A program made the translations under genes and the position numbers. The notes under the pieces are model-generated. The model ran no database searches and was not told the origin of the DNA. It worked only from the letters and a program-made list of their open reading frames with translations. DNA of 63,909 bases, counting the filler, from Octopus bimaculoides (taxonomy: Eukaryota), in NCBI RefSeq assembly GCF_001194135.2. It is 9 parts of 7 records of this genome, joined end to end, with 100 filler letters (N's around TTAATTAATTAA, not from the genome) between each part and the next. Parts side by side here need not be neighbours in the genome. Positions count along the whole stretch, not along the records: positions 4,536 to 23,506 come from NC_069005.1; 8 more parts are not named here. The stretch is one strand, 5' to 3'. Positions 6,144-23,746 of this stretch are shown here, in pieces. How positions within the stretch are numbered: the stretch's first letter is position 1; each line of letters opens with the position of its first letter.

Positions 6144-6229
6144 TACCAGCTACACCAGCAGATTATGCTAAATTCATGCTACATCACACTATCAAATGAA
6201 GTTAAGTTTATCAACTTACATTACCAGAA

Positions 6230-6357
6230 CAAGCTAAGCTCACCAGCTCATACAAATTGATCAAGCTGAGCTCATCAGCTCATACTAATAGATCAGGCTA
6301 AGCTCACTAACTCATACTAATAGATCAAGCTAAGCTCACCAGCTCACACCAGATAAA
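6230..6357. repeat. 32-bp minisatellite x4 (caagctaagctcaccagctcatactaatagat) within an AGCT-rich degenerate tract (~6140-6800)
   Basis: Four adjacent near-identical 32-nt units read directly. Confidence 0.85.
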
Positions 6358-7059
6358 GAAACTAATTTTACGCCAGCTCACATCAGCAGGTAAATCTTAA
6401 AGACGGTAGACTTTGATTTGAGGAAAAAAATTAGTCACAAAGAGGTACTTTGATTAGTTCGGTTGCTCTTTTTGGTTTTACTCCCGTTGCTGTTGCTATT
6501 TAGGCCTAGGTCACCAACATACACTAGCAGATTAATAGACAGCTCACACTACCAGCTTACAGGAGTAAATCTTGCTAGGCTCATGCCAGCTAAGGCCAGA
6601 GCATCAAACTAAGCTCACAACAGTTCCCTTCCACAGATGCTAGTAAGATCACAACTGGAAAAGCCTATCAAAACAAGCCCATACGGGCTGAAGACCAGCA
6701 AATCAAGTCAAGTTTGTACCAACTCACACTAGTTCATACCAGCTGATACCAGTAAGCCAAATCTAGCTTATACCGGTTCACACTCGTTCACTCAAAACTG
6801 CTCCCATAGTTCAACAAACTCCAATGGTATATGCACAGAATTCAGATCAAATAGTCTTTACATGTTGCTTGATGTTCACTCCGCAATCATTTCTTATCCC
6901 TATTATTGTACGCGCTTTCGCAGCAATATTTTTCAAATGTAAACATTTAATCAGAGAAGCCATAAAGGCAAATGCACTTTAGTTACCGAGGAGAAAATGT
7001 CTCTTACAGTAAAAAGGTGTGAAAACACTCAGTCCGTTCAATGTCGCCATTTGTTAGGA

Positions 7060-7104
7060 ATCTCAGACATCGATGTTTCGAGTTTTCTGACTTGTCAATG
7101 AGAT
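7060..7104 (-). ncRNA. Type I hammerhead ribozyme motif, family A copy 1 (U3-A8 core, stem II damaged)
   Basis: Minus strand reads AUCUCA-UUGACAA-GUCAGAAAACUC-GAAAC-AUCGAU-GUC-UGAGAU: perfect 6-bp stem I, palindromic stem III, GUC site. Confidence 0.7.
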
Positions 7105-7374
7105 GTACCCAAGAGAGGCAAGTCTGAACAAACTTAATAAAGCTGTAGCTTTATATATATTTGCTCTAGTAGATCGCCCAATCAAGGTAAATAACGAAGC
7201 ATTGGCGCAAAGCAGTGTTTAGGTATCAGCAGAACTTAGGTTAGTTGAAATATGTTTGTTACATTCTTCAACTGCTAAAAGGCAAATACACTGCAGTTAC
7301 CGTGGAGAAGAATCTCTCTTATGGTAAAAAGGTGTGAAAACACCCAGTTTGTTCAGTGTTGCCATCTATTAGGA

Positions 7375-7421
7375 ATCACAGACATCGATGTTTCAAGCTT
7401 TTTGACTCTTGTCAATGAGAT
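7375..7421 (-). ncRNA. Type I hammerhead ribozyme motif, family A copy 2 (U3-A8 core)
   Basis: Minus strand reads AUCUCA-UUGACAA-GAGUCAAAAAGCUU-GAAAC-AUCGAU-GUC-UGUGAU: stem I 5/6 bp, 4-bp stem II with wobbles, palindromic stem III. Confidence 0.75.
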
Positions 7422-7676
7422 GTACCTAAGAGAGGCAACTCTGGATGAACTTAACAAAGCTATAGCTTTATATATAATTCAGTCATACCTAAACATTGCT
7501 TTGTGCCAATGCTTCGTTATTTACTTTGATCAGGCGATCTACTAGTGCAAATCAGTCAGCGTGTTGACTGAATTATATTGAAAGCTACGGCTTTATTAAG
7601 TTGAAATATTTGACAAACAGATTCCAACTAACCTACGCTCTGCTCATACCCAAACACTGCTTTGAGCCAATGCTTC

Positions 7677-8189: not shown

Positions 8190-8770
8190 CGGTTTCGTTG
8201 TATGAGGCTCCGATAACGTACTCTTTGTTTGTCATTCATAATGCTTTTGTCGAATGTGACATTTGCAAAGAAGGCCACAGGTATTGCAAGTATGAGGATT
8301 ATGGGTCAATGCAAGTGGTATATTTGCAGCCGCTTTTCTTCTTTGCCTTGCAACCCTAAGCCTGTTAATACTGATTCAAACAAGATCTCTTATACAATTT
8401 TGACATGAAGGTCACTATTCTGTTCGCTCCAATATTGTTTACCCAAAGGTGTTATGAGCTATATTGACTTCGGAGATGTTACTCTTCAGCATGTCCTTAT
8501 ATCTGAACAATGGTCGACCATCATTCCTGTGCCCACAATGAAGCTGGCTGTACATGAGGACTTTGGGTATTCTTTCGTCACTCTTTCTGACGACATGACC
8601 TGCCCAGCGCAATTGCGACTGCATAAGTAAAATCTCTATTCCACAGATCTTACACTTGCTAAACAAGTTGATATTAAACACTCTGCTTTTAGTGAATAAC
8701 CGCAGATTGTCATGAGACAGCCTTTGTAGAAGACGTCCAATTTCTTAATGTGCCACCTGTAAAGTGTCCA
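8190..8770 (-). mobile_element. RTE-clade LINE fragment, C-terminal ORF region
   Basis: ORF 8439-8681 reads QLRWAGHVVRKSDERIPKVLMYSQLHCGHRNDGRPLFRYKDMLK, a typical RTE post-RT motif. Confidence 0.85.
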
Positions 8771-10479: not shown

Positions 10480-12450
10480 TAAGAGCTCACGTCTCTGGTT
10501 CAAAGCATGTTAATCCTGGAACAGGGTGAAGAACATTTCAGAGAGGCAAAGATTCCTTCCCGTTCCACTACACGTTGCTTAGCACTGACTACACATCCTT
10601 CGTTTTTAGCCTCGAGGTGATGGTTAAGCGCCATTCTCGCAGCTAAAACTCGAAGCGCGGAGCCAGATTCCAGTGCTTTGTCTAGGGCTCTAACTAAAGT
10701 CCTTTCTACTCTATTTTTCTTAGCTACTAACTCTTTGCTATACCTAATAGACTCAAATTCTAAGGCTCTTTTGAGGGCATACCATCATTTGTTGTTAATA
10801 ATATCACTACACAATGCCCTCATCACTAACTGTCTAATGTGACTCCTGTACTCTTCATAAGCCAAAAGTGACTTATTGAGTTTCCAGTAGCCGGATCCCT
10901 GTCTACGCAACTTATCTAAGTCCAGCCTACAGGTCACAAATTTGTGATCACTGCAGCTGACATAGTGAAATTGTGGACGACTAACTAGGTTTTTGTCTAT
11001 TTCCCTAATTAGAACCCTGTCTAAATATGCTCTAGATGACCCATCGCTATTCGTCCATGTCAACAATGGAGCATCTAGGACATCTAGTCTGTACCCAGCT
11101 GAAATCGACTGAGCAGCTTATTAAAGCACGGGTTTCCCCTCCTATCAACAGACGAGCCAACGTAATAGACGCGTGCATCGCAGATTACGTTAAAGTCACC
11201 TAATATTATTATGGTGTGAGACGTCACAAGAAAGTTCTCCAGGCTTCGAAAGAAATCAGACTGTCCAGTTCCCGTGGGAGTATAGACAGCTAACAGACTG
11301 AAGATCTTACCGCTGCTTAGTGTCATGTCAAGGACGACCAACCTACCTTCCGGGTCGATGAAGATGGTTCTTGTCTCTAAATTCAGGTTTTACTTGAGCA
11401 ACACAGCGACGCCTCTCCCTCCTCCAGGTAGGCATAGAGGAATAATTTTCTCGTAGCCATTTAGCAGGGGTGAAAAGTCTCTTTGACTACTCAGTCTGGA
11501 CCCTGTGGCAACTATAATATCCATTCTCTGCAACCTGAGGTCATTAAGGAAATGACCTTGTTTCCACTCTGACCCCTGACCGCGTACATTCAAACACCCT
11601 ACATTAAGAATATCCATAATGGCTATGCTTACAGTTTGAGATAGGGTGGTACACTTCACTCCTCTTATGAGTATGCCACGTCGTTCTAGACTGAACGGAG
11701 GAACAGCTCCACCGCCTCGTGTTATCCAGTTTTTTTCTTTTTACTTTGGTCACAAATGATTTGTATATCACGGTGCACCGCAGTGCATTATGTGTCGTTT
11801 CACTGTTTCGCTCTCCTCCCTTTTCATCACACCTTTGTATTTTCCGAGTTCGTCGCTTCCACAGTTTATCGTCTTTTTTGAGACGCCGGCCGCTGCTGCA
11901 AAATTGCTAGCTTTTCTTCCTTGAATAAATTCTTCTTCTGTCGGAATGCTATTTAAAACTGTACTGCCTTCTCCGCTATTGATATCTTTCCATTCACTTG
12001 TACCAGGTTTACTACTGGTCTTGGCTTTAATAGGTGATTTGTCCATTTTTTTGTTGTTTTTGAAAAATACGACGATATTTTCCCCCTTCACACAAGGGGG
12101 AAAACGTTAATAAAGGGCTGCCACAAGCAGAAAAGTAGGTGTTTAAAAAACACTCAACAAAAGTTAAACAACGTAGTAATTCAACAGCACAAATTCAACA
12201 AATTAACCAAAAGTATTACAACTTACGCCAAACCTTTCGAACAACGCACAAACAAAATTCACGATCAAGTCGGTCAGAGATGACTGTAATAAATTTCTTT
12301 ATTGACAAGGGTCTTACGCAGAAGGGACAGCATAAAGACAGACAAAACAGTACAAAGTGGGGACAAAAACGTGAATCGATTGAAGGTGAATTTATACAAT
12401 AATGGGGGTGAAATGGCCACCTGAGCCCCACTCTCGAGTGGTTACATTTA
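10480..12450 (-). mobile_element. Tx1/L1-like LINE 5' part: 5'UTR, deleted ORF1 and APE endonuclease; ends before RT
   Basis: Frameshifted ORFs carry APE motifs LNVRG, GVAVLL, ILGDFN, TW...YLDRVL, SDHK and YWKLNKSLL. The ORF1 remnant reads MDKSP...NFAAAAG. Confidence 0.85.
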
Positions 12451-12489
12451 ACTAAAGTTTTAAAATCTTATTTTAATCATATATTTTAC

Positions 12490-12823
12490 TTACTTTGCCA
12501 GATGACGTATGTCATTAGATCGTCGTAGTTCACGACCGGAAAGTTGAGAGATACGACAGGTTAGCTTGGGAAGTAAAGCAGTTGTGGTCGATGAAAAAGG
12601 TAGCAGTAGTACCAATAATTGTCGGAGCCCTGGGAACAGTGGGCAAAAATCTCGAGAAGGAGTGGCTGTGTGGTAAGTAGCTTGTTTACCAATCACATGG
12701 TTCCGGGTTCAGTCCCACTGCGTGGAACCTCGGGCAAGTGTCTTCTACTATAGCCCCGGGCCGACCAAAGCCGTGTCAGTGGATCTGGTAGACGGAAACT
12801 GAAAGAAGCCCGTCGTATATATG

Positions 12824-12874
<51 letters not shown>

Positions 12875-13263
12875 TTGTGTGCCTGTGTTTGTTCCCCCAA
12901 CATCGCTTGGCAACCGATGCTGGTGTGTTTACGTTCCCGTAACTTAGTGGTTCGGCAAAATACACCGATAGAGTAAGTACTAGGCTTACAAAGAATAAGT
13001 CCTGGGGTCGATTTCCTCGACTAAAGGCGGTGCTCCAGTATGGCAGCAGTAAAATGACTGAAACAAGTAAAAGAGTAAAAGAGTAAGTACGTGGAACAAA
13101 TAGGGGCTGCAATAAGGGTGGAGCACTTGCAGAAAACAGCACTGCTTGGAACCGCTCGAATACTCCGAAAGGTGCTCGAAAAATAAGAGGTGTTACCTTA
13201 GTTCACTGGTAGTGAACAGCTGACACTGTAGTGCATCTCCAGTGTTAGAAGCTGTGCAAAGAA

Positions 13264-13340
<77 letters not shown>
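12490..13340 (+). mobile_element. R4/Dong-like LINE 3' end with (AAT)n tail, interrupted by a SINE
   Basis: VVPIIVGALGTVGKNLEK resumes after the SINE as YVEQIG...LQKTALLGTARILRKVLEK*; (AAT)n follows at ~13264-13340. Confidence 0.85.
12660..13087 (+). mobile_element. tRNA-derived SINE family S1, full length, internal (AT)/(GT) tract
   Basis: A-box TGGCTGTGTGG, B-box-like GGTTCAGTCCC, CORE-like GGGCAAGTGTCTT, (AAGAGTA)n tail; many copies in the window. Confidence 0.9.
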
Positions 13341-13343
<3 letters not shown>

Positions 13344-13404
13344 CAACAACAACAACATCGAAAAATACCTTAGGAATGAGAACCCATTCTCGAAGTTTCC
13401 CCAA

Positions 13405-13566: not shown

Positions 13567-13747
13567 AAAGTTAAAGAAGTGATTTTAAATTCTCAATCGC
13601 AGGATAATGCTAATAATATAGCCTGAACAGGATAAACTACCCCTCCGCCTACACTTTTTTCTGCAAAATAGGGGTAGTTTATCCTGTTCAGGCTATATTA
13701 TTAGCATTATTCTGCGATTGAGAATTTAAAATCACTTCTTTAACTTT
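13567..13747. mobile_element. Foldback/MITE-like element: 78-bp arms with one mismatch and a 25-nt loop
   Basis: 13567-13644 is the reverse complement of 13670-13747. Confidence 0.85.
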
Positions 13748-13749
13748 AT

Positions 13750-14140
13750 GTAAATAATGTTTCTTCTCCTGTCGATAAAAGTTGCCTCCTCCATTACTGG
13801 TAGCAGGCAACTTTCAATCTCCTTTTCAGTCGCCATTCCGATTTTCTTCGATGTGGCCGCTTGCGTTCTGTATACTATCATTCCTCTTTTTTGCTTGACG
13901 CTTTCTTCCGGAGGTACCACCTTCAACGCCGTTCCCTTTTTCTTGATGAACTGCTGGCACGCATCCAGTGTCTTCTGGTCTATCTGCAGCGTCTTCACCT
14001 CCAGCAAGGCACCAACATTCTTACCGGTTCCTGCGGCAACCGCATAGTTTGGTTTGGTGTCCACCTCCATAATGAGACGGAGACCAATTTTCACCCCGAA
14101 ATGGAGGGAAAAAACCACAAACAAAACTGCCAAACGGGCT
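13750..14140 (-). mobile_element. Gag-like LINE ORF1 N-terminal fragment (element E2)
   Basis: MEVDTKPNYAVAAG...IVYRTQAATSKKIGMATEKEIESCL is homologous to the ORF1 at 17.2-17.9 kb. Confidence 0.7.
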
Positions 14141-14149
14141 ATATGTAAC

Positions 14150-14630
14150 AAGATTAACTTCTTGTACAATTTTGGAGGCACATCCTTTTGATGTGCCCCT
14201 TCTGGTCGCAACAATAGCAGGTGGGAGGTCTCCCTTCCACTGTCACCTTCAATTTTATATCGTCCGACAACTCGATAATTTCGTGGACCTCATTTAGGTC
14301 CGATTGGGTGGCCTGGATAATTAATTCCAGGCCGAACTGTTGTGTTCGAGTTGCCTGAACAACTTTTGCCTCATCCTTTGTACCAGTGAGCATAACATCT
14401 CGCATTTCCAACTGTCTTCGCCATGTTCCGATTTCCAGCTACAGACGGGTAGCTTCCAACCCGCGCGCTCTATGTCCATTTCAGACAGTTTTTCCACCCC
14501 GAATTGGGGAAAGTATATACAACAAAAAACACAAGCTTGCTGAACAAACTACGTGTTTTTAACAAACAGCAACAAATTAAATAATAAATTCCAACAATTT
14601 CAACAATTCACAATACTGGGCAGAAGCCTT
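14150..14630 (-). mobile_element. Internally deleted gag-like ORF1 with CCHC zinc knuckle (element E1)
   Basis: GRPPTCYCCDQKGHIKRMC fits C-X2-C-X4-H-X4-C; it has its own 5' leader and ATG at 14479. Confidence 0.8.
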
Positions 14631-15575
14631 TAGACAAAATCTCTCATGCTTGATTTACCCCTAACCTGCTGTCCACCACTACTTAACCTGCCTTCCTCTA
14701 AATTTGAAATTACTACTATCCCTCCAATTAGATTTTAAATTCTTGTTTGATTCACTTGTCTGTCAAACAGCAGTATAGTGGAGATGTGTTTTCTTATCTT
14801 ACTCTTGTTTTTTGCAAACATCTTCAAAATGACTTTCTAAAATGAAATTCCATTATGCAGCTGAGGAGTACATTTTCATTGTATTTTCTGTGGTGTTCTC
14901 ACTACATGAATAAATGGAGCTTGTACGAAACGTACGTACTGCTATAACCTATTGAANNNNNNNNNNNNNNNNNNNNNNNNNNNNNNNNNNNNNNNNNNNN
15001 NNNNNNNNNNNNNNNNNNNNNNNNNNNNNNNNNNNNNNNNNNNNNNNNNNNNNNNNNNNNNNNNNNNNNNNNNNNNNNNNNNNNNNNNNNNNNNNNNNNN
15101 NNNNNNNNNNNNNNNNNNNNNNNNNNNNNNNNNNNNNNNNNNNNNNNNNNNNNNNNNNNNNNNNNNNNNNNNNNNNNNNNNNNNNNNNNNNNNNNNNNNN
15201 NNNNNNNNNNNNNNNNNNNNNNNNNNNNNNNNNNNNNNNNNNNNNNNNNNNNNNNNNNNNNNNNNNNNNNNNNNNNNNNNNNNNNNNNNNNNNNNNNNNN
15301 NNNNNNNNNNNNNNNNNNNNNNNNNNNNNNNNNNNNNNNNNNNNNNNNNNNNNNNNNNNNNNNNNNNNNNNNNNNNNNNNNNNNNNNNNNNNNNNNNNNN
15401 NNNNNNNNNNNNNNNNNNNNNNNNNNNNNNNNNNNNNNNNNNNNNNNNNNNNNNNNNNNNNNNNNNNNNNNNNNNNNNNNNNNNNNNNNNNNNNNNTATA
15501 TATATATATATATATATACATGTGTGCGTGTGTGTACATGTGAGCCAGTGTCTATGTACCTACAGAAAAACACAC

Positions 15576-16978: not shown

Positions 16979-17211
16979 GGCGCAGGAGTGGCTGTGCCGT
17001 AGGTAGCTTCAGTCCCACTGCGTGGCACCTTGGGCAATTTTCTTCTACCATAGCCTCGGGCCGACCAAAGCCTTGTGAGTGGATTTAGTAGACGGAAACT
17101 GAAAGGAGCACGTCGTATATTTGTATATGTATATATATATATATGTATATGTGTGTATGTGTTTGTGTGTCTGTGTTTGTCCACACCAACATCGCTTGAC
17201 AACCGATGCTG
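16979..17211 (+). mobile_element. SINE S1, 3'-truncated, abutting element E3
   Basis: Matches the 12660 copy. Confidence 0.85.
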
Positions 17212-18000
17212 TGGTAGCAGGTGGGAGGTCTCCTCTCCACCACCACTCACAGCTTCACTTCTGGCAGCTCTATCTCTTTCACAATTTCTTGCAATTCCTG
17301 TGAAGTGGCCTGGATTATAACTTCCAGGCCATATCCCCAGCAGTTCAGTTGCTTTGTCCGACTCCCCTGCAGCACTTCTGGGTTCTCTCTTGTTTCCGTC
17401 AAGATTGCTGCAAGCAGCCACATCTCAGCAATCTCAGGGGGCACTCAGCCAATCTTTCCTCTCGCCAGTCGTTCATCGAGATATGTTGGCAGAAGTACCT
17501 ATTCCTCCGTTCTCAATGTTGTAGTGCAGTGCTTTATTGCCTCCTCTATGGTATCAAAGCGCACTTCCACTGTGCCGAATTTTCTTCCTCTACAGAAAAA
17601 TTTAATGTAGTTTCTTATTTCTTTCAGGCACTCTTCTATTGCTTCTTTACTTGCCATCTCTATTTTCTTGCTTGTAAGTGATAGGGTTCTGCACACCACC
17701 ATTCTTTCGTTTTTCATTCTTGTTACATCTTCAGTGGGAGGTCAACTTTAGTCTTGACCTTTCTCTTTGAATTAATTCCTTGCTGCTTTTTAATATTTCT
17801 AACTCCACAGTTAACTCGTTCATTTCCAGCTGGTTAACAGTCACTGTTATATTTTCACGACTTGCTACTGAAGCGTAGCTCCCGACATGTGTTTGCAACA
17901 CTTCCGTTGCTTACTGCTATTTTCGCCCCTACTGGGGTAGAAAACAAAAACAAAACACAAACAATACAACAATCAATCAACAATGGCTTAACGGTACCAA
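17212..18000 (-). mobile_element. Gag-like LINE ORF1, nearly complete up to the knuckle but disrupted (element E3)
   Basis: GSYASVA...RMVVCRTL...KEAIEECL...RGRKFGTVEVRF...GYGLEVIIQAT...RRPPTC, with stops and frameshifts. Confidence 0.8.
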
Positions 18001-18887
18001 CAATAGGTAACACCGCTATGGAGGACCTTCAGCAAAGGGTAACTTGTCCGCAACGATAATGATTAATCAAGCTCACCAACTCTCTCCCCATACTCTTTGC
18101 GGATGTCCATTGGTATTGTAGCACATACCATTAGGAGCCAACTAAATAGGGGTGTTCTACTTCCACACAACATATTGATAGATAGATTTATAGAGATACA
18201 CATATAAATAATATATATACATATACATACATATATATATATATATANNNNNNNNNNNNNNNNNNNNNNNNNNNNNNNNNNNNNNNNNNNNNNNNNNNNN
18301 NNNNNNNNNNNNNNNNNNNNNNNNNNNNNNNNNNNNNNNNNNNNNNNNNNNNNNNNNNNNNNNNNNNNNNNNNNNNNNNNNNNNNNNNNNNNNNNNNNNN
18401 NNNNNNNNNNNNNNNNNNNNNNNNNNNNNNNNNNNNNNNNNNNNNNNNNNNNNNNNNNNNNNNNNNNNNNNNNNNNNNNNNNNNNNNNNNNNNNNNNNNN
18501 NNNNNNNNNNNNNNNNNNNNNNNNNNNNNNNNNNNNNNNNNNNNNNNNNNNNNNNNNNNNNNNNNNNNNNNNNNNNNNNNNNNNNNNNNNNNNNNNNNNN
18601 NNNNNNNNNNNNNNNNNNNNNNNNNNNNNNNNNNNNNNNNNNNNNNNNNNNNNNNNNNNNNNNNNNNNNNNNNNNNNNNNNNNNNNNNNNNNNNNNNNNN
18701 NNNNNNNNNNNNNNNNNNNNNNNNNNNNNNNNNNNNNNNNNNNNNNNNNNNNNNNNNNNNNNNNNNNNNNNNNNNNNNNNNNNNNNNNNNNNNNNNNNNN
18801 NNNNNNNNNNNNNNNNNNNNNNNNNNNNNNNNNNNNNNNNNNNNNNNNNNNNNNNNNNNNNNNNNNNNNNNNNNNNNNNNNNNNNNN

Positions 18888-18926
<39 letters not shown>

Positions 18927-19378
18927 GGTAAAATTAATTAATTAATTAATGATTAATAATTATCAATTTTACCAAGTAGTCAATACGTTAAAAAACCCTT
19001 TTTAGGTGAATTATACAAAATATTATTATATACGTAATTATAATCAGGTTTCAGCTAAGTGCCTCGTCAGAAAAAACTGCAGTTTCGATCGTGGAGTAAA
19101 TTATAATTTTAATAGGGTAAAATTAATTAAATAATTAAAAAATTAATCATTTTACCAAGTAGTCAGTACGTTAAAAAAAACATTTTTAGGTGAATTATAC
19201 AGAATATTCTGTAATTGTATACATAATTATCATCAGGGTTCAGCTAAGTATCTCGCAAGTACTGAATTAGAAATAGATGCTAATGTCTTTTCAACTACCA
19301 TAAGAATCTCCGAGACAGTCACACACTTTTATATGTAGGTAAAAAGAAAAATGATGAATACACAACGACTTAGGTTAA

Positions 19379-19438
19379 CCACAGACGCGGTTCGAATTTA
19401 AAGTAAATTATATTTACCTATTAATCTCCTCAGTGTGG
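19379..19438 (-). ncRNA. Type I hammerhead motif, family C, minus copy (GAAA core mutated to GAAC)
   Basis: CCACA-CUGAGGA-GAUU...AUUC-GAACC-GC-GUC-UGUGG. Confidence 0.7.
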
Positions 19439-19614
19439 TATTCATCATTTATTCCATGATCGAAACTGCAGTAACATACACGTGCGTATAAAAGATAAAT
19501 ATGTATCACATTCGGCTATATATTTTGGGGAGTGTGGTTGAATATTGGTTATGTGATGACGCTTGCTCGCATACAAATTTGATCCCAACACTCGCAAATT
19601 TATAAATTGGAGTT

Positions 19615-19674
19615 CCACACTGAGGAGAATAATAGGTAAATATGATTTACTTTAAATTCAAAACGCGTCTGTGG
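19615..19674 (+). ncRNA. Type I hammerhead motif, family C, plus copy (G12 to A)
   Basis: CCACA-CUGAGGA-GAAU...AUUC-AAAAC-GC-GUC-UGUGG; stems I and II perfect, ACGCGU palindromic stem III. Confidence 0.75.
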
Positions 19675-20341
19675 TTAACTTAAGTTGTTGTGTATTCATC
19701 ATTTTTCTTTTTACTTACATATAAAAGTGTGTGATTGTCTCGGAGATTCTTATGGTACTTGAAAGGACAGTAGCGTCTATTTCTAATTCAGTATTTTGCG
19801 AGGCACTTAGCTGATCCCTGATTATAATTATGCATATAATTATAGAATATTANNNNNNNNNNNNNNNNNNNNNNNNNNNNNNNNNNNNNNNNNNNNNNNN
19901 NNNNNNNNNNNNNNNNNNNNNNNNNNNNNNNNNNNNNNNNNNNNNNNNNNNNNNNNNNNNNNNNNNNNNNNNNNNNNNNNNNNNNNNNNNNNNNNNNNNN
20001 NNNNNNNNNNNNNNNNNNNNNNNNNNNNNNNNNNNNNNNNNNNNNNNNNNNNNNNNNNNNNNNNNNNNNNNNNNNNNNNNNNNNNNNNNNNNNNNNNNNN
20101 NNNNNNNNNNNNNNNNNNNNNNNNNNNNNNNNNNNNNNNNNNNNNNNNNNNNNNNNNNNNNNNNNNNNNNNNNNNNNNNNNNNNNNNNNNNNNNNNNNNN
20201 NNNNNNNNNNNNNNNNNNNNNNNNNNNNNNNNNNNNNNNNNNNNNNNNNNNNNNNNNNNNNNNNNNNNNNNNNNNNATATATGCGTGTGTATGTGTATTT
20301 ATATATATATATATATATATATACACATACGTTATATATAT

Positions 20342-20407: not shown

Positions 20408-21687
20408 GTATGTATATATATATACATACATATGTATGTATGTATGCATGTATGTATGCATGTATGTATGTATGTATGTATATGCGGGCTATATCATTTT
20501 CCTTACGTTCGCTTAATTTAGTCATTGTATAACCTGATAATTATGTAGGTATGTGTAATAATGTACGTATACGTGTATGTTTGTGTGCTATGTATTTGAG
20601 TGAGAGTGTGCAAGGTAGTAATTTATGTATGTATGTGTGTGTTTGTATTTCGATTTGTTTTTCACCCCGCAGGAAAAAAAGACAAAACCTTAAATTAGCA
20701 AGCAATATATATGTATGCATACATATATATATATAAGCGCCCCCTCATATATACATCATCCAATTTTGTGTAATTGTCATTCACAATAGTTCCCAATTTC
20801 AGGTCTTTGTGTCATATATGTATATACATAAATGTATAAAGACAGAGAGGGAGAGTGTGTGTGTGAGAGAGAGAGAAATGCACATATATAGATGTGTATA
20901 TNNNNNNNNNNNNNNNNNNNNNNNNNNNNNNNNNNNNNNNNNNNNNNNNNNNNNNNNNNNNNNNNNNNNNNNNNNNNNNNNNNNNNNNNNNNNNNNNNNN
21001 NNNNNNNNNNNNNNNNNNNNNNNNNNNNNNNNNNNNNNNNNNNNNNNNNNNNNNNNNNNNNNNNNNNNNNNNNNNNNNNNNNNNNNNNNNNNNNNNNNNN
21101 NNNNNNNNNNNNNNNNNNNNNNNNNNNNNNNNNNNNNNNNNNNNNNNNNNTATATATATACACACATATATATACATATATATACATATATATACACATA
21201 CATATATATACATATATATATATACATATATACACATATATGTGTGCATGATACTTATATTATTTATACATTTACGTATACATGTATATATATATCTATA
21301 TGCATACTTATGTGTGTGGATGAGTGTGTGCGTGTGTATATGTGTGTATATGTGTGTGTATGTGTGTGTATGTGTGCGTGTGTGTGCGCGCACGCGTACG
21401 TGTGCAATCTAATTTTTAATGTTGTTGCTGTTCTTGCTACTGCTATCTATCTTTCGTTTATCGTTTTTTTTTTGTTGTTTTTTTTTGTTTCTTTCACTTC
21501 CATTCTCAATTCTGTCAATTTTTGATGAAGACTCTTTTGAAAGCGCTACGAATTTTCGGTTGAAGAAACACATAGATAAATAGATAAAGTAAATAGAGAA
21601 ATAAGAAATAAATAATCGTAATGACGATGATGATGATGAGGATAAAAATAAAAGAAGAAAAAGTAAAAGGGGGAGTACTTACGAAGA

Positions 21688-21734
<47 letters not shown>

Positions 21735-21948
21735 ATAGTAGTAGTTATTATTCATATACACGCAACAGATTAGACTGCTGGAAATGAAAAATTCCTAACA
21801 TCAGGCTACAAGTAACCTTAGATGCCAAGAACCCACCTAAGTATCCTAGCTGTCCCTAATAACACTGTTTTCTGGAGCTGTACTAAATAGAGTTTTATGC
21901 CTATTTCCTCTATCCATCTGTTCAAATGTTCAAATCTTTAGGGATTGT
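21688..21948 (-). mobile_element. R4/Dong-like LINE 3' terminal fragment with (TAC)n tail, fused to a 5S copy
   Basis: Homologous to 22381-22560; encodes TIPK.LNRWIEEIGIK...LQKTVLLGTARILR. Confidence 0.8.
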
Positions 21949-21953
21949 GAGAT

Positions 21954-22070
21954 GCTTACAGCACTAGGTTTCCCAAGCGGTCACCCATCTAAGTACTCAC
22001 TAGGGCAGACGTTCCTTAACTTCGGTGATCGGACGAGAATCTGTACATTCAACGTGATATGGCTGTAAGC
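21954..22070 (-). pseudogene. 5S rRNA-derived copy, full length (117 nt), no oligo-T terminator
   Basis: Minus strand reads GCTTACAGCCATATCACGTTGAA...CTCGTCCGATCACCGAAGTTAAG...GTACTTAGATGGGTGACCGCTTGGGAA...GCTGTAAGC, collinear with metazoan 5S rRNA. Confidence 0.9.
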
Positions 22071-22074
22071 TTGA

Positions 22075-22206
22075 GAGATGCTTACAGCACCTAGGTTTCC
22101 CAAGCGGTGACACATCTAAGTACTCACTAGATTCGATGTTGCTTAAATTCAATGATTGTAAGTTAAGCAACGTCGAGCCTCGTGAGTATTTAGATGGGTG
22201 ACCGCT
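22075..22206. pseudogene. Partial 5S copies: minus-strand 3' half (22075-22149) plus an inverted plus-strand internal control region (22160-22206)
   Basis: AAGTTAAGCAACGTCGAGCC...TAGATGGGTGACCGCT on +; its diverged reverse complement is at 22103-22149. Confidence 0.85.
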
Positions 22207-22289
22207 ATTATTATCATTATTGTTATTATAACAATAATAATATTTAAAAAAAACTTAATAGTGAAACCCTTAGTAATTATATTGAAAAC

Positions 22290-22297
22290 AATTAATA

Positions 22298-22383
<86 letters not shown>

Positions 22384-23460
22384 CACTTAACAAATTACAC
22401 TGTTGGAAAAGAAAATAATCCTATACAGCAAGTATCCTTGGATACCAAGAACCCCCCTAAATATCCTAGCTGTCCCTAATAACACTGTTCTCTGCAGCTA
22501 TACTAAGCTGGGATTTATGCCTATTTTCTCTATCCATCTGTTCAGATTTTTAGGGTTAGTTCCCAATTTACCTATATCTCCATAGTCTCTTTAATTAAAT
22601 AACTAGGTCTTGGTACTTTGCTACTTTTTCTATACTTCTCATATTTATTTTATCATCACGTTCCCACGGTAAAGTCAATTATCTGGCACTTTCTATTGTT
22701 TGTATCAGGCCATCTAGCTTCTATTACTCTATCAGTCTGAATGTTAAAGTCCCACAACATATTACATTTCTTACTTTCTAGTGCTTTCTAGGTTAATGTT
22801 CACACCATTTATCAGTATGTTCAAATCCTAGCTTTCTACATAGCTCCCAGTGGATTGCTCTCCCTAGATTGTCATGTCTTTTCTTGTATTCTTTCTGTGC
22901 TAACGTGCTACATTCGCTTACTATATGAGTAACGCTTTCTTCTTTTGAGTTGCATAATCTACATTGCGATCTACCTCATTTTTGTGCATCTTGGCTTTAT
23001 CCAATTAATCCTTAATGCTTGATCCAGTGCGGCTACTAACACACTTTCTGTCTCCCTTTTCAGCTTTCTTTTCTGCAACCATAACCTTGTCTCACTACTA
23101 CTATTTGCTGCAGCTATCTTTGGGAATCTACCATGCAATGTCTTCCCCTGCCAATCAGATAATTTCTGTTCTTTTTTCTGATTTTTAAGTTCGCTTGGTG
23201 TTTTGGTTTCCCTATGTCTTGCTGTGACTCTACTAGCTTTTAATAAACTTTCTTCACTATTAAGTACATAGAAGTCTATATCAACTCTAGCTAACACCAT
23301 GCAGTCATCTACTGATATTAATCCTATTCCACCTTCCTTTCTAGGTAGGTATAATCTTACTACTCCTGCCCTTGTGTGGAGTCCTCCATTCATACTGAAT
23401 TCCGTCCTAGTTCTTCTGTCTACCGTTGCTATTCAGTTTTTGTCCAATGTACAAAGGCTA
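22290..23460 (-). mobile_element. R4/Dong-like LINE 3' ~1.1 kb with (AAT)n tail
   Basis: RLYLPRKEGGIGL, WLQKRKLKRETESVLVAALDQALR, and a C-terminal LQ.TVLLGTARI motif, followed by TAA-type repeats. Confidence 0.9.
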
Positions 23461-23746
23461 CTACACATACATACACATATTTATATACATACATACATAC
23501 ATATATNNNNNNNNNNNNNNNNNNNNNNNNNNNNNNNNNNNNNNNNNNNNTTAATTAATTAANNNNNNNNNNNNNNNNNNNNNNNNNNNNNNNNNNNNNN
23601 NNNNNNGTGCCTCTCTCATTTTTATTCACCTTTTGTTATCATCCTCATCTCATTAATGTCCGTGTCCAGCCCGCAGCTACTTTACGTTTGTCTGTCCTTG
23701 TTTGTCCTCTCTTTGTAAGGCATTAATGGCCAATCTAATGAAATAA

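What the first reader, a model, noticed from the sequence alone, without database searches (positions are those of the whole stretch)
21688..22075. 5S rRNA head fused to an R4/Dong LINE tail: candidate SINE3 or template-jump chimera
Seen (minus strand): a full 117-nt 5S copy starting at nucleotide 1, then ATCTC, then ~190 nt matching the extreme 3' end of the neighbouring R4/Dong-like LINE, then (TAC)n. No T-run follows the 5S, and the first T5 lies at 21787-21791, predicting a ~280-nt Pol III transcript. Established: SINE3s pair a 5S promoter with a LINE-derived tail, and R2-group RTs jump end-to-end between RNA templates. Inference: a 5S SINE mobilised by an RLE-type LINE would be an unusual pairing.
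Basis: partly seen in the sequence, partly recalled or inferred. Interest (0 to 1): 0.75.

Follow-up and report, generated by a model that had tools for sequence, protein, structure and literature searches.

The report
5S rRNA fused to Dong-LINE tail
A decayed retro-copy joins a complete 5S rRNA sequence to the last ~194 bases of a Dong-type LINE and carries an extra hairpin of 5S pieces in front; it is either one copy of a 5S-headed SINE or a one-off template-switch product, and these tools could not tell which.

Summary
On the minus strand a full 5S copy (22070-21953; Rfam 75 bits) is followed by TCTC. Then come 194 nt (21948-21755) that match the 3' end of the neighbouring degraded LINE (82-87%), then (TAA)2-(TAC)19. 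The LINE is Dong-like: its tail region carries a CCHC knuckle and a restriction-like endonuclease, and it ends in (TAA)n.

An inverted 5S piece (~44-95) in front of it forms a 50-bp hairpin. The whole 451-bp block lies between TAA-like repeats, so it looks like one Dong-type insertion with at least two template switches at its 5' end.

Both 5S units carry TCTC where a U-run terminator should be. That points to a terminator-less 5S source, which favours a SINE lineage (about 0.5). A single multi-template chimera remains plausible (about 0.35). Against a working SINE, a T5 lies inside the tail, 32 nt before its end.

The host is probably an octopus. An Octopus vulgaris repeat annotation lists 9.8 Mb of 'SINE 5S' and 93 Mb of Dong-R4.

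The parts
22380..23445 (-). LINE-A: a 5'-truncated, degraded Dong-like LINE fragment (RT thumb, CCHC knuckle, RLE, C-terminus, 3' UTR ending in GTGTATA). It belongs to the same family as the tail of the chimera.
   Evidence: Conceptual translation across frameshifts. 202 homologues, best E=7e-82 at 45-47% identity. Weak zf-RVT match. Homologue P0004 aligns to R2 proteins 9nl2, 9nl3, 9dou and 8gh6 through the RT and the CCHC+RLE region.
22291..22382 (-). (TAA)n tail or target microsatellite of LINE-A, about 31 units.
   Evidence: Tandem Repeats Finder. Sequence read.
22206..22290 (-). AT-rich spacer ending in a degenerate TAA-like repeat (aataacaataatgataataata). This is the 5' flank, and presumed target, of the composite insertion.
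   Evidence: Sequence read.
22154..22205 (-). Inverted (antisense) 5S piece, about 5S positions 44-95. It is the left arm of the hairpin.
   Evidence: Hairpin fold z=-7.2. Rfam reports only spurious miRNA-like hairpin hits here.
22079..22158 (-). Partial sense 5S copy, about positions 40-118. It is the right arm of the hairpin plus the 5S 3' end. The hairpin turns at CAATCATTG (22158-22150).
   Evidence: Rfam 25.8 bits, E=0.006 in the local search. 85% identity to the full copy over 86 nt. Alignments.
22071..22078 (-). TCTC+TCAA linker between the partial 5S and nucleotide 1 of the full 5S.
   Evidence: It is 7/8 identical to the 8 nt that follow the full 5S.
21953..22070 (-). Complete 5S rRNA-derived unit, 118 nt from nucleotide 1. 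Helix I is 9/9 paired; 6 of 34 consensus pairs are broken.
   Evidence: Rfam RF00001 75.3 bits, E=1.2e-14, model 1-120. Pair count. Genuine 5S genes in L001 score 104-115 bits.
21949..21952 (-). TCTC: a 3' extension of the 5S that is not a U-run and is not LINE-derived. It is shared by both 5S units.
   Evidence: LINE-A has ..TTGGGA at the homologous place. The outgroup 5S gene has T8 at this position.
21818..21948 (-). LINE-derived tail, coding part. These are the last 41 codons of the LINE ORF (TIPKDLNRWIEEIGIKLYLVQLQKTVLLGTARILRWVLGI, stop at 21820-21818), with an 8-bp duplication TTTGAACA within 21934-21919.
   Evidence: Translation. Alignment to LINE-A. Homologue C-termini.
21755..21817 (-). 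LINE-derived tail, 3' UTR, ending in GTGTATA as in LINE-A. It contains the T5 at 21791-21787.
   Evidence: Fold.
21688..21754 (-). TGAATAATAAC followed by (TAC)19: the 3' microsatellite, a short TAA-like stretch and then TAC repeats.
   Evidence: Tandem Repeats Finder. Sequence read.

Best explanation
The 451-bp block 22205-21755 is one old, dead retro-insertion. It was made by the reverse transcriptase of a Dong-like (R4-clade, RLE-type) LINE at a (TAA)n microsatellite.

The main RNA template was most likely a transcript of a 5S-headed, Dong-tailed non-autonomous element, that is, a SINE3-type lineage. Such an element would consist of 5S nucleotides 1-118, a terminator-less linker TCTC, the last ~194 nt of the LINE, and (TAA)n.

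In such an element (all steps here are inferred):
1. The internal 5S promoter (box A / IE / box C) would recruit TFIIIA, TFIIIC and TFIIIB.
2. Pol III would start at 5S nucleotide 1 and read through the dead terminator into the tail.
3. The Dong protein would bind the tail, nick a TAA repeat and prime reverse transcription on it.

At this insertion the enzyme reached the 5' end of the RNA, which is 5S nucleotide 1. It then switched to a second 5S-bearing template with the same TCTC extension and copied it back to about position 40. There it snapped back on its own cDNA to about position 95, before joining the upstream target. This produced the partial 5S and the hairpin.

- **Shown:** the anatomy, the LINE type, the TAA context, and the two 5'-end template switches.
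- **Inferred:** that the 5S-tail junction was inherited from a multi-copy family rather than made in this event.

This copy cannot be a source element, because of its T5, its 8-bp duplication and its 6 broken 5S pairs.
For: 1. **Shared TCTC extension.** Both 5S units are followed by TCTC+NCAA, 7/8 identical (about 4e-4 by chance). TCTC is neither LINE sequence nor a U-run, whereas a genuine 5S gene (L001) runs straight into T8. Two separate templates therefore carried a terminator-less 5S, which is what a SINE head needs and what mature 5S rRNA is not expected to be (general knowledge of Pol III termination).
2. **Possible shared junction.** The ACA that follows TCTC is the first LINE codon (T of the GALG-T-I/T-P-K motif). 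The upstream unit shares CAA with it, which hints that its template also carried the junction.
3. **Head and tail fit a SINE3.** The head is complete from nucleotide 1, with the box A to box C region largely intact. The tail is shared with a LINE family present next door.
4. **One insertion.** The block is flanked by TAA-like repeats on both sides, and no LINE sequence lies upstream of it.
5. **Base rate.** The host is probably an octopus (SINE at 12650-13090, identified from memory). An Octopus vulgaris repeat annotation lists 'SINE 5S' at 9.83 Mb in 4 families and Dong-R4 at 92.7 Mb in 51 families (PMC13282606). A random 19-kb window is therefore far more likely to hold a family copy than a one-off 5S chimera.
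Against: - No second copy of the junction was seen anywhere. There is none in the 19-kb piece and none in the viral, metagenome or prokaryote collections. A six-frame protein search also found none. The host genome appears to be absent from all of these collections, so this is absence of data, not of copies.
- The tail has T5 where LINE-A has TTTTCTTTT. A Pol III terminator therefore probably stood 32 nt before the 3' end in the ancestor too, which would cripple a Pol III-driven SINE.
- Polarised by an outgroup, the full 5S unit has no more private changes than the two hairpin arms. The 'head' had thus hardly diverged from the second 5S template, which fits two copies of cellular 5S as well.
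- The 'SINE 5S' class in the octopus paper comes from an automated pipeline. Its one recently active family averages 6 kb per insertion, which is not SINE-like. The tails of those families are not described.
- Host identity rests on my memory of a SINE sequence.
Confidence: 0.5

Rival explanations
1. One-off multi-template chimera. In a single Dong-type target-primed reverse transcription, the enzyme copied the last ~194 nt of a (broken) LINE RNA. It then jumped to the 3' end of a free 5S transcript and copied it to nucleotide 1. It jumped to a second 5S transcript, stalled near loop C (about position 40) and snapped back. The 5S-LINE junction would then be unique, and the product never propagated. 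A variant: 5S and a LINE RNA fragment were first joined by an RNA ligase and the ligated RNA was copied.
For: - The locus directly shows serial template switching: nucleotide 1 of the full 5S abuts the 3' end of another 5S unit, followed by an inverted repeat.
- It has the same architecture as known chimeras, which join a full-length small RNA in sense orientation to a 5'-truncated LINE 3' end. Known examples are U6/L1 and 5S/L1 in primates, where each junction is unique and the 5S is often cut at positions 46 and 90 (bioRxiv 10.1101/2025.02.02.635956).
- Tripartite chimeras from double jumps are known in Magnaporthe (PMC2104539). RNA ligation before retrotransposition is known for U6/L1 (PMC6789731).
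- R2-group RTs jump end to end between templates (established knowledge).
- The T5 inside the tail argues against a Pol III-driven family.
- The three 5S pieces form a near-star tree with similar branch lengths.
Against: - Both 5S units carry TCTC instead of a U-run. Mature or nascent 5S RNA is expected to end in U's, as in the L001 gene, so two independent cellular 5S templates should not share TCTC unless that is the host's natural trailer.
- By base rate such chimeras are rare: 253 in total, about 10% with 5S, in primate genomes. 'SINE 5S' annotation in octopus amounts to megabases.
- The model needs the LINE RNA to end or break exactly at an in-frame codon about 194 nt from its 3' end.
Confidence: 0.35
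2. DNA-level juxtaposition. A severely 5'-truncated Dong copy and 5S pseudogene material came together by separate insertions, tandem duplication (127-bp spacing), deletion between tandem copies, or palindrome formation, not in one reverse-transcription event.
For: - The two 5S units are spaced 127 bp apart as a direct repeat (D14).
- Dong-type elements pile up head to tail in each other's (TAA)n tails, as in the homologue locus L002. Later deletions between neighbours are therefore conceivable.
- Short 5'-truncated Dong tails exist on their own (L002 7320-7430).
Against: - The repeat junction falls exactly at 5S nucleotide 1, and the 5S-LINE junction exactly at the end of a 5S unit. RNA ends explain this; random DNA breakpoints do not.
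- The 5S block has no LINE tail or microsatellite of its own between it and the truncated LINE.
- The whole block sits between TAA-like repeats.
Confidence: 0.08
3. Assembly artefact: a mis-join or hairpin chimera in a draft, gap-rich assembly.
For: The piece has five N gaps and is very rich in simple repeats.
Against: - 21151-23506 is free of gaps.
- The hairpin arms are only about 82% identical and the two 5S units about 85%. Assembler artefacts give identical arms.
- The junctions fall at RNA ends.
Confidence: 0.03

Closest known systems
SINE3 (5S rRNA-derived SINEs: zebrafish SINE3, AmnSINE1/DeuSINE, HaSE3 and other lepidopteran SINE3, SINE3-1_TC)
   Same: A 5S-derived head carrying the internal type-1 Pol III promoter, with no terminator after the head and a 3' tail taken from a LINE of the same genome. 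These SINEs are thought to be born by template switching from a LINE or SINE RNA onto 5S RNA (PMC3272025; PMC10886601).
   Different: - Known partners are APE-type LINEs (CR1/L2, RTE). Here the tail comes from an RLE-type LINE that homes to TAA repeats. I found no paper reporting a Dong/R4-tailed SINE.
- The head here is a whole, well-folded 5S rather than a diverged promoter region.
- The tail is long (194 nt), keeps 41 ORF codons and contains a T5.
- Multi-copy status is unproven.
Template-switch chimeric retrocopies (U6/L1 and 5S/L1 in primates; MINE and tripartite chimeras with the MGL LINE in Magnaporthe)
   Same: A small RNA is fused directly to a 5'-truncated LINE 3' end and inserted as one unit. 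More than one switch per event is documented. The 5S breakpoints fall near loop C (about position 46) and about position 90, matching the hairpin limits here of about 40-44 and 95 (PMC2104539).
   Different: - Those chimeras were made by APE-type LINEs (L1 in primates, the MGL LINE in Magnaporthe); the L1 ones carry poly(A) tails and TSDs. Here the enzyme would be an RLE-type Dong element acting at a microsatellite.
- In primates the 5S part is usually antisense and truncated. Here a full sense copy is present, plus a sense/antisense palindrome of the same segment. That fits a snap-back, not classical twin priming.
- Both 5S units lack the expected U-run.
Dong (Bombyx mori) and other R4-clade LINEs, annotated 'LINE/Dong-R4' in cephalopods
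   Same: Domain order of RT, then CCHC, then RLE. The 3' end abuts (TAA)n. Insertions nest in each other's TAA tails. The class is abundant in octopus (92.7 Mb in O. vulgaris).
   Different: Placement in an RT phylogeny was not tested. The window copy is a 5'-truncated, frameshifted fragment.
R2-derived SIDEs (short internally deleted elements)
   Same: Non-autonomous elements mobilised by an RLE-type LINE through its 3' end.
   Different: SIDEs are internal-deletion derivatives of the LINE, transcribed with the rDNA. They have no Pol III head (from the literature as cited in PMC11481361).

Membership tests
SINE3 (5S-derived SINE) | Head derived from 5S rRNA with the internal promoter region (box A, IE, box C) | tested here: met
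   Rfam 5S match at 75.3 bits covering model 1-120. 28 of 34 consensus pairs are kept. The region 50-97 is nearly identical to a genuine 5S gene.
SINE3 (5S-derived SINE) | 3' tail shared with a partner LINE of the same genome | tested here: met
   194-nt tail is 82-87% identical to the 3' end of LINE-A, 430 bp away.
SINE3 (5S-derived SINE) | Multi-copy family: many dispersed copies with the same head-tail junction and different flanks | not testable with these tools
The host genome is absent from the protein and DNA collections (18, 20, 21, 30, 31, 69, 70). There is no second copy in the 19-kb piece.
SINE3 (5S-derived SINE) | Pol III can transcribe head and tail to the 3' end (no terminator after the head or inside the body) | tested here: not met
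   No T-run follows the head (TCTC instead). A T5 at 21791-21787 lies 32 nt before the end of the tail, and LINE-A has TTTTCTTTT at the same place. This holds for this copy; the state in a family consensus is unknown.
Template-switch chimeric retrocopy | Small RNA copy fused directly, in sense orientation, to a 5'-truncated LINE 3' end and inserted as one unit | tested here: met
   5S nucleotides 1-118 + TCTC + LINE codons to the stop + 3' UTR. TAA-like repeats lie on both sides and no LINE sequence lies upstream.
Template-switch chimeric retrocopy | Junction unique in the genome (each chimera is an independent event) | not testable with these tools
   Same limits as for the copy count.
Dong / R4-clade LINE (for the partner LINE) | Restriction-like endonuclease and CCHC motif C-terminal to the RT | tested here: met
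   The window fragment reads CRLCNSKEESVTHIVSEC ... RWPD ... IIDF ... EKVAKYQDL. Homologue P0004 (46% identity, E=5e-80) aligns to R2 proteins through the RT and the CCHC/RLE region (9nl2, E=1.5e-21).
Dong / R4-clade LINE (for the partner LINE) | No APE endonuclease; single ORF | tested here: inconclusive
   The window copy is 5'-truncated. In homologue locus L002 the ORFs upstream of the RT give no Exo_endo_phos match, but that element is frameshifted.
Dong / R4-clade LINE (for the partner LINE) | Insertion in, and 3' end abutting, (TAA)n microsatellites (Dong) | tested here: met
   LINE-A is followed by (TAA)31. LINE-B is followed by (TAA)n at 13264-13355. L002 is followed by (TAA)n. The Dong target is given in the literature (PMC3812793).
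Dong / R4-clade LINE (for the partner LINE) | Placement within the R4 clade in an RT phylogeny | not tested
   No reference R4, Dong, R2, NeSL, Hero or CRE sequences were at hand. The window copy lacks most of the RT.
Functional 5S rRNA gene | Intact structure, T-run terminator, tandem rDNA context | tested here: not met
   75 bits against 104-115 bits for genuine genes. 6 pairs are broken. There is no terminator and no rDNA array.

The most novel reading that the evidence does not exclude
This is a copy of a previously uncharacterised SINE3 family whose partner is an RLE-type, TAA-microsatellite-homing Dong LINE. It would be the first 5S-headed SINE driven by the R2/R4 supergroup and a target-specific SINE. 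It might also account for part of the ~9.8 Mb annotated only as 'SINE 5S' in octopus genomes.
Probability: 0.4. Interest if true: 0.6.

Novelty: new variant of a known kind. Interest (0 to 1): 0.4.

Why it matters
**If it is a family.** It would extend SINE-LINE partnerships to the restriction-like-endonuclease LINEs. It would also show that a Pol III head can ride a microsatellite-homing machinery. That in turn would explain some of the unclassified 5S-type repeats in cephalopod genomes, where Dong-R4 elements are among the most active LINEs.

**If it is a one-off.** It would be a natural in-vivo record of the serial end-to-end template jumping and snap-back that R2-group reverse transcriptases show in vitro. 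It would also be a snapshot of how a SINE3 is born.

**Either way** it is a dead, neutral insertion with no sign of host function.

Tried and rejected
**Searches that could not answer the copy-number question**
Copy number, junction variants and transcription could not be checked.
- Exact-pattern scans found nothing. I searched for the junction, a conserved tail 24-mer, the 5S 3' end plus TCTC, and a 32-mer of the inferred ancestral 5S. These went to viral contigs, metagenome contigs (cap reached) and genome contigs (cap reached).
- Protein-space searches found no copies either. A six-frame query over the 5S plus junction returned only 5S rDNA arrays of other organisms (Eumeta japonica, and an ENA contig fetched as L001). 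A tail-peptide query gave at most 57% identity.
- Look-ups of three window ORFs were not on record. I conclude that the host genome is not in these collections, so these negatives say nothing about copy number.
- Rfam found no small-RNA chimera in the two homologue loci L002 and L003.
- Literature searches for a Dong/R4-tailed SINE, for an octopus 5S SINE description, and for printed sequence strings gave nothing specific. Three papers were not held.

**Readings considered and rejected**
- A functional 5S gene: no terminator, 6 broken pairs, no array.
- 5S inserted into a longer LINE: no LINE sequence lies upstream.
- Classical twin priming for the inverted piece: the inverted and direct segments cover the same 5S positions, so a snap-back fits better.
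- The miRNA-like Rfam hits on the hairpin and on the microsatellites are below threshold and are artefacts.
- The repeat finder 'inverted repeats' I1-I12 are runs of N.

**Comparison that gave no answer**
- The synonymous/non-synonymous pattern between the tail and LINE-A (about 4:10, counted by eye on the alignment) is neutral. It does not separate the models.
Full report
**1. What is there**

Read on the minus strand, the region contains the following, in order.

- **LINE-A (about 23445-22380).** This is a 5'-truncated, frameshifted LINE fragment. Its conceptual product runs from the RT thumb (..VDRRTR..RLYLPRKEGGIGLISV) through a CCHC knuckle (CRLCNSKEESVTHIVSEC) and a PD..D..K-type nuclease motif (RWPD..IIDF..EKVAKYQDL). 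It continues to a C-terminus of the form ..LQRTVLLGTARIFRGVLGI and a 3' UTR ending in GTGTATA.
- **(TAA)31 (22382-22291)**.
- **An 85-bp AT-rich spacer** ending in a degenerate TAA-like repeat.
- **An inverted 5S piece (22205-22154)**, about 5S positions 44-95.
- **A sense partial 5S (22158-22079)**, about positions 40-118.
- **TCTC+TCAA (22078-22071).**
- **A complete 5S (22070-21953).**
- **TCTC (21952-21949).**
- **194 nt of LINE 3' end (21948-21755).**
- **TGAATAATAAC and (TAC)19 (21754-21688).**

**2. Is it more than chance?**

Yes.

- The full 5S is a full-length Rfam hit: 75.3 bits against a gathering score of 38, E=1.2e-14.
- The partial copy is recognisable only locally: 25.8 bits, E=0.006. 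It is 85% identical to the full copy over 86 nt.
- The tail aligns to LINE-A with E=9e-39 and at 87% over 122 nt (D11).
- The hairpin formed by the inverted and partial pieces folds at -51 kcal/mol against -26±3.5 for shuffles (z=-7.2).
- Genuine 5S genes in an unrelated rDNA array (L001) score 104-115 bits. The window copy has 6 of 34 consensus pairs broken, but helix I is 9/9 paired. It is a decayed copy of a properly folded 5S, not a gene.

**3. The LINE**

- The conceptual C-terminal 313 aa finds 202 homologues, the best at E=7e-82 and 45-47% identity. The few that carry names come from a sea urchin and an ascidian.
- One homologue, P0004, has the RVT_1 domain. In the PDB it matches R2 retrotransposon proteins best (9nl2, E=1.5e-21). 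The alignment runs through the RT and again through the CCHC knuckle and the nuclease (..RRPD..IIDFAV..EK..KYQDL..GALG).
- In homologue locus L002 the ORFs upstream of the RT give no APE match.
- LINE-A ends directly in (TAA)n. So do a second, different Dong-like 3' end in the window (LINE-B, + strand, ending at 13262 before (TAA)n at 13264-13355) and the L002 element.
- In L002 another 5'-truncated tail sits inside that TAA run. This is the same nesting as seen in the window.
- TAA microsatellites are the published target of Dong elements (PMC3812793, citing Kojima & Fujiwara 2004 and Xiong & Eickbush 1993).
- I therefore accept 'Dong-like, RLE-type'. No RT phylogeny was done.

**4. The tail**

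- Once an 8-bp duplication (TTTGAACA) is removed, the tail reads in frame as TIPKDLNRWIEEIGIKLYLVQLQKTVLLGTARILRWVLGI-stop. It matches the family's C-terminus (..GALGT[IT]PK....IGI......QKTVLLGTARILRKVLEI-stop in the homologues) and stops at the same place.
- The LINE part therefore begins at ACA (21948). TCTC is not LINE sequence: LINE-A has ..TTGGGA there.
- The 3' UTR (63 nt) ends in GTGTATA as in LINE-A.
- The only T run of four or more in the whole element is the T5 at 21791-21787, in the UTR 32 nt before its end. LINE-A has TTTTCTTTT at the same place.
It would lack the terminal hairpin, the GTGTATA and the TAA repeats.

**5. The 5' end of the block records template switching**

- Nucleotide 1 of the full 5S abuts, with no spacer, the end of another 5S unit that also carries TCTC. 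An RNA 5' end joined to the 3' part of another template is the signature of a jump by the reverse transcriptase, not of a DNA breakpoint.
- The inverted piece covers the same 5S positions (about 44-95) as the start of the partial sense copy (about 40-118). The turn is at CAATCATTG.
- This is what a snap-back of the nascent cDNA gives. The cDNA 3' end folds back near position 40-48 and copies itself to about position 95. Classical twin priming would instead invert a different, adjacent segment.
- The limits (about 40-44 and 95) are close to the recurrent 5S breakpoints at 46 and 90 in primate 5S/L1 chimeras (bioRxiv 10.1101/2025.02.02.635956).
- TAA-like sequence lies immediately upstream of the inverted piece and immediately downstream of GTGTATA. 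No LINE sequence continues upstream.
- The 451-bp block therefore behaves as one Dong-type insertion.

**6. Family copy or one-off?**

This is the question that matters, and it could not be answered directly.

- Exact-pattern scans of the viral, metagenome and prokaryote collections found nothing.
- Protein-space searches returned only distant LINEs and foreign 5S arrays.
- Window ORFs are not on record.
- The host genome is simply not in these collections.

*Indirect evidence for a family*

(a) Both 5S units are followed by the same TCTC+NCAA, 7/8 identical (about 4e-4 by chance). TCTC stands exactly where a genuine 5S gene has its T-run. Two templates with a terminator-less 5S are expected for transcripts of a SINE lineage. 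They are not expected for cellular 5S RNA, whose 3' end is a U-run (general knowledge). TCTC(T)C looks like a T-run interrupted by C's; that is inference.

(b) The CAA shared after TCTC overlaps the first LINE codons. This hints that the second template also carried the junction.

(c) Base rates. The window holds a ~440-bp SINE (12650-13090) that I recognise from memory as the abundant octopus SINE. In Octopus vulgaris, 'SINE 5S' covers 9.83 Mb in 4 families and Dong-R4 covers 92.7 Mb in 51 families, with 1129 recently active insertions (PMC13282606). In primates, one-off 5S chimeras number in the tens.

*Indirect evidence for a one-off*

(d) The terminator-like T run inside the tail is probably ancestral.

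(e) There are two further switches in the same event, which shows a jump-prone reaction with 5S-type RNA at hand.

(f) Polarised with an outgroup, the full 5S has no more private changes than the two hairpin arms, roughly 4-6 per 55 nt each. The arms share only three derived changes, next to the turn. The 'head' was thus hardly diverged from the second 5S template.

(g) The octopus 'SINE 5S' class comes from an automated pipeline. Its one recently active family averages 6 kb per insertion.

*Weighing.* I put a family copy at about 0.5, a one-off (including an RNA-ligation variant, PMC6789731) at about 0.35, DNA-level juxtaposition at about 0.08 and an assembly artefact at about 0.03.

**7. Age and state**

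- Pairwise differences among the 5S pieces are 15-22%. The tail differs from LINE-A by 13-18%.
- With about 8% per lineage, the insertion is old. On the calibration used for O. vulgaris (JC 0.09 is about 25 My) it would be a few tens of millions of years old, if the host is an octopus.
- This is inference. The tail's most conserved 14 residues are untouched, which may mean less decay than the 5S pieces suggest. I could not resolve that tension (note 4).

**8. Comparison with what is known**

- 5S-headed SINEs (SINE3) are known from fish, mammals, beetles and moths, with CR1/L2 or RTE tails.
- Chimeric small-RNA/LINE retrocopies, including tripartite ones, are known for L1 and for a fungal LINE.
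- I found no report of a SINE with a Dong/R4 tail, or of natural chimeras made by an RLE-type LINE, in the library searched. That is not proof of absence: Repbase and Dfam were not available.

**9. Verdict**

- The feature is a dead retro-insertion of moderate interest.
- It would become a good small finding if the junction proves to be multi-copy, as a new SINE3 variant with an RLE-type, microsatellite-homing partner.
- A single BLAST against the host genome settles it.

Noticed in passing
window 12650-13090 (+); second partial copy at 17008-17211 (+): A ~440-bp SINE with a tRNA-like 5' end and an internal (TA)n(TG)n. From memory it is the abundant Octopus SINE, which suggests the host is an octopod. 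ARAGORN calls no tRNA there.
   Followed up: partly
window ~12480-12649 and 13091-13262 (+), with (TAA)n at 13264-13355: A second Dong-like LINE 3' end (LINE-B) of a different subfamily from LINE-A. It is split by the SINE above and reads ..VVPIIVGALGTVGKN / ..LQKTALLGTARILRKVLEK-stop. Like LINE-A it ends in a long TAA microsatellite.
   Followed up: partly
window 10788-11740 (-): ORF pieces of an APE-type LINE endonuclease, with weak Exo_endo_phos matches.
   Followed up: partly
window 8442-8744 (-): An ORF with a ..LRWAGHVVRKSDERIPK.. motif, which I recall as typical of the C-terminus of CR1/L2-like LINEs. It has no Pfam match.
   Followed up: no
window 13735-14438 (-) and 17250-17741 (-): Related ORFs. 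The first has a CCHC knuckle (CYCCDQKGHIKRMC), so they may be gag-like parts of an unidentified retroelement present twice. The one ORF scanned (13735-14289) has no Pfam match.
   Followed up: no
window 14957-15536, 18212-18924 and other N runs: The longest 'inverted repeats' and the 276-nt 'direct repeat family' reported by the repeat finder (I1-I12, D1) are runs of N (assembly gaps at 14957-15496, 18248-18887, 19853-20276, 20902-21150). They are artefacts.
   Followed up: yes
window 19257-19443 / 19610-19796, and 13567-13644 / 13670-13747: Two real inverted repeats: 187 nt at 92% with a 166-nt loop, and 78 nt at 99% with a 25-nt loop. They may be foldback or MITE-like elements.
   Followed up: no
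window 6184-6349, and 6996-7162 / 7311-7479: A 32-bp tandem repeat (4 or more units), and a ~316-bp tandem duplication at 86-89% identity.
   Followed up: no
L002 7250-7430: In a distant host, a Dong-like LINE ends in (TAA)n and a ~110-nt 5'-truncated tail of another copy sits inside that TAA run. Head-to-tail nesting in TAA tails therefore seems a general habit of this LINE group.
   Followed up: partly
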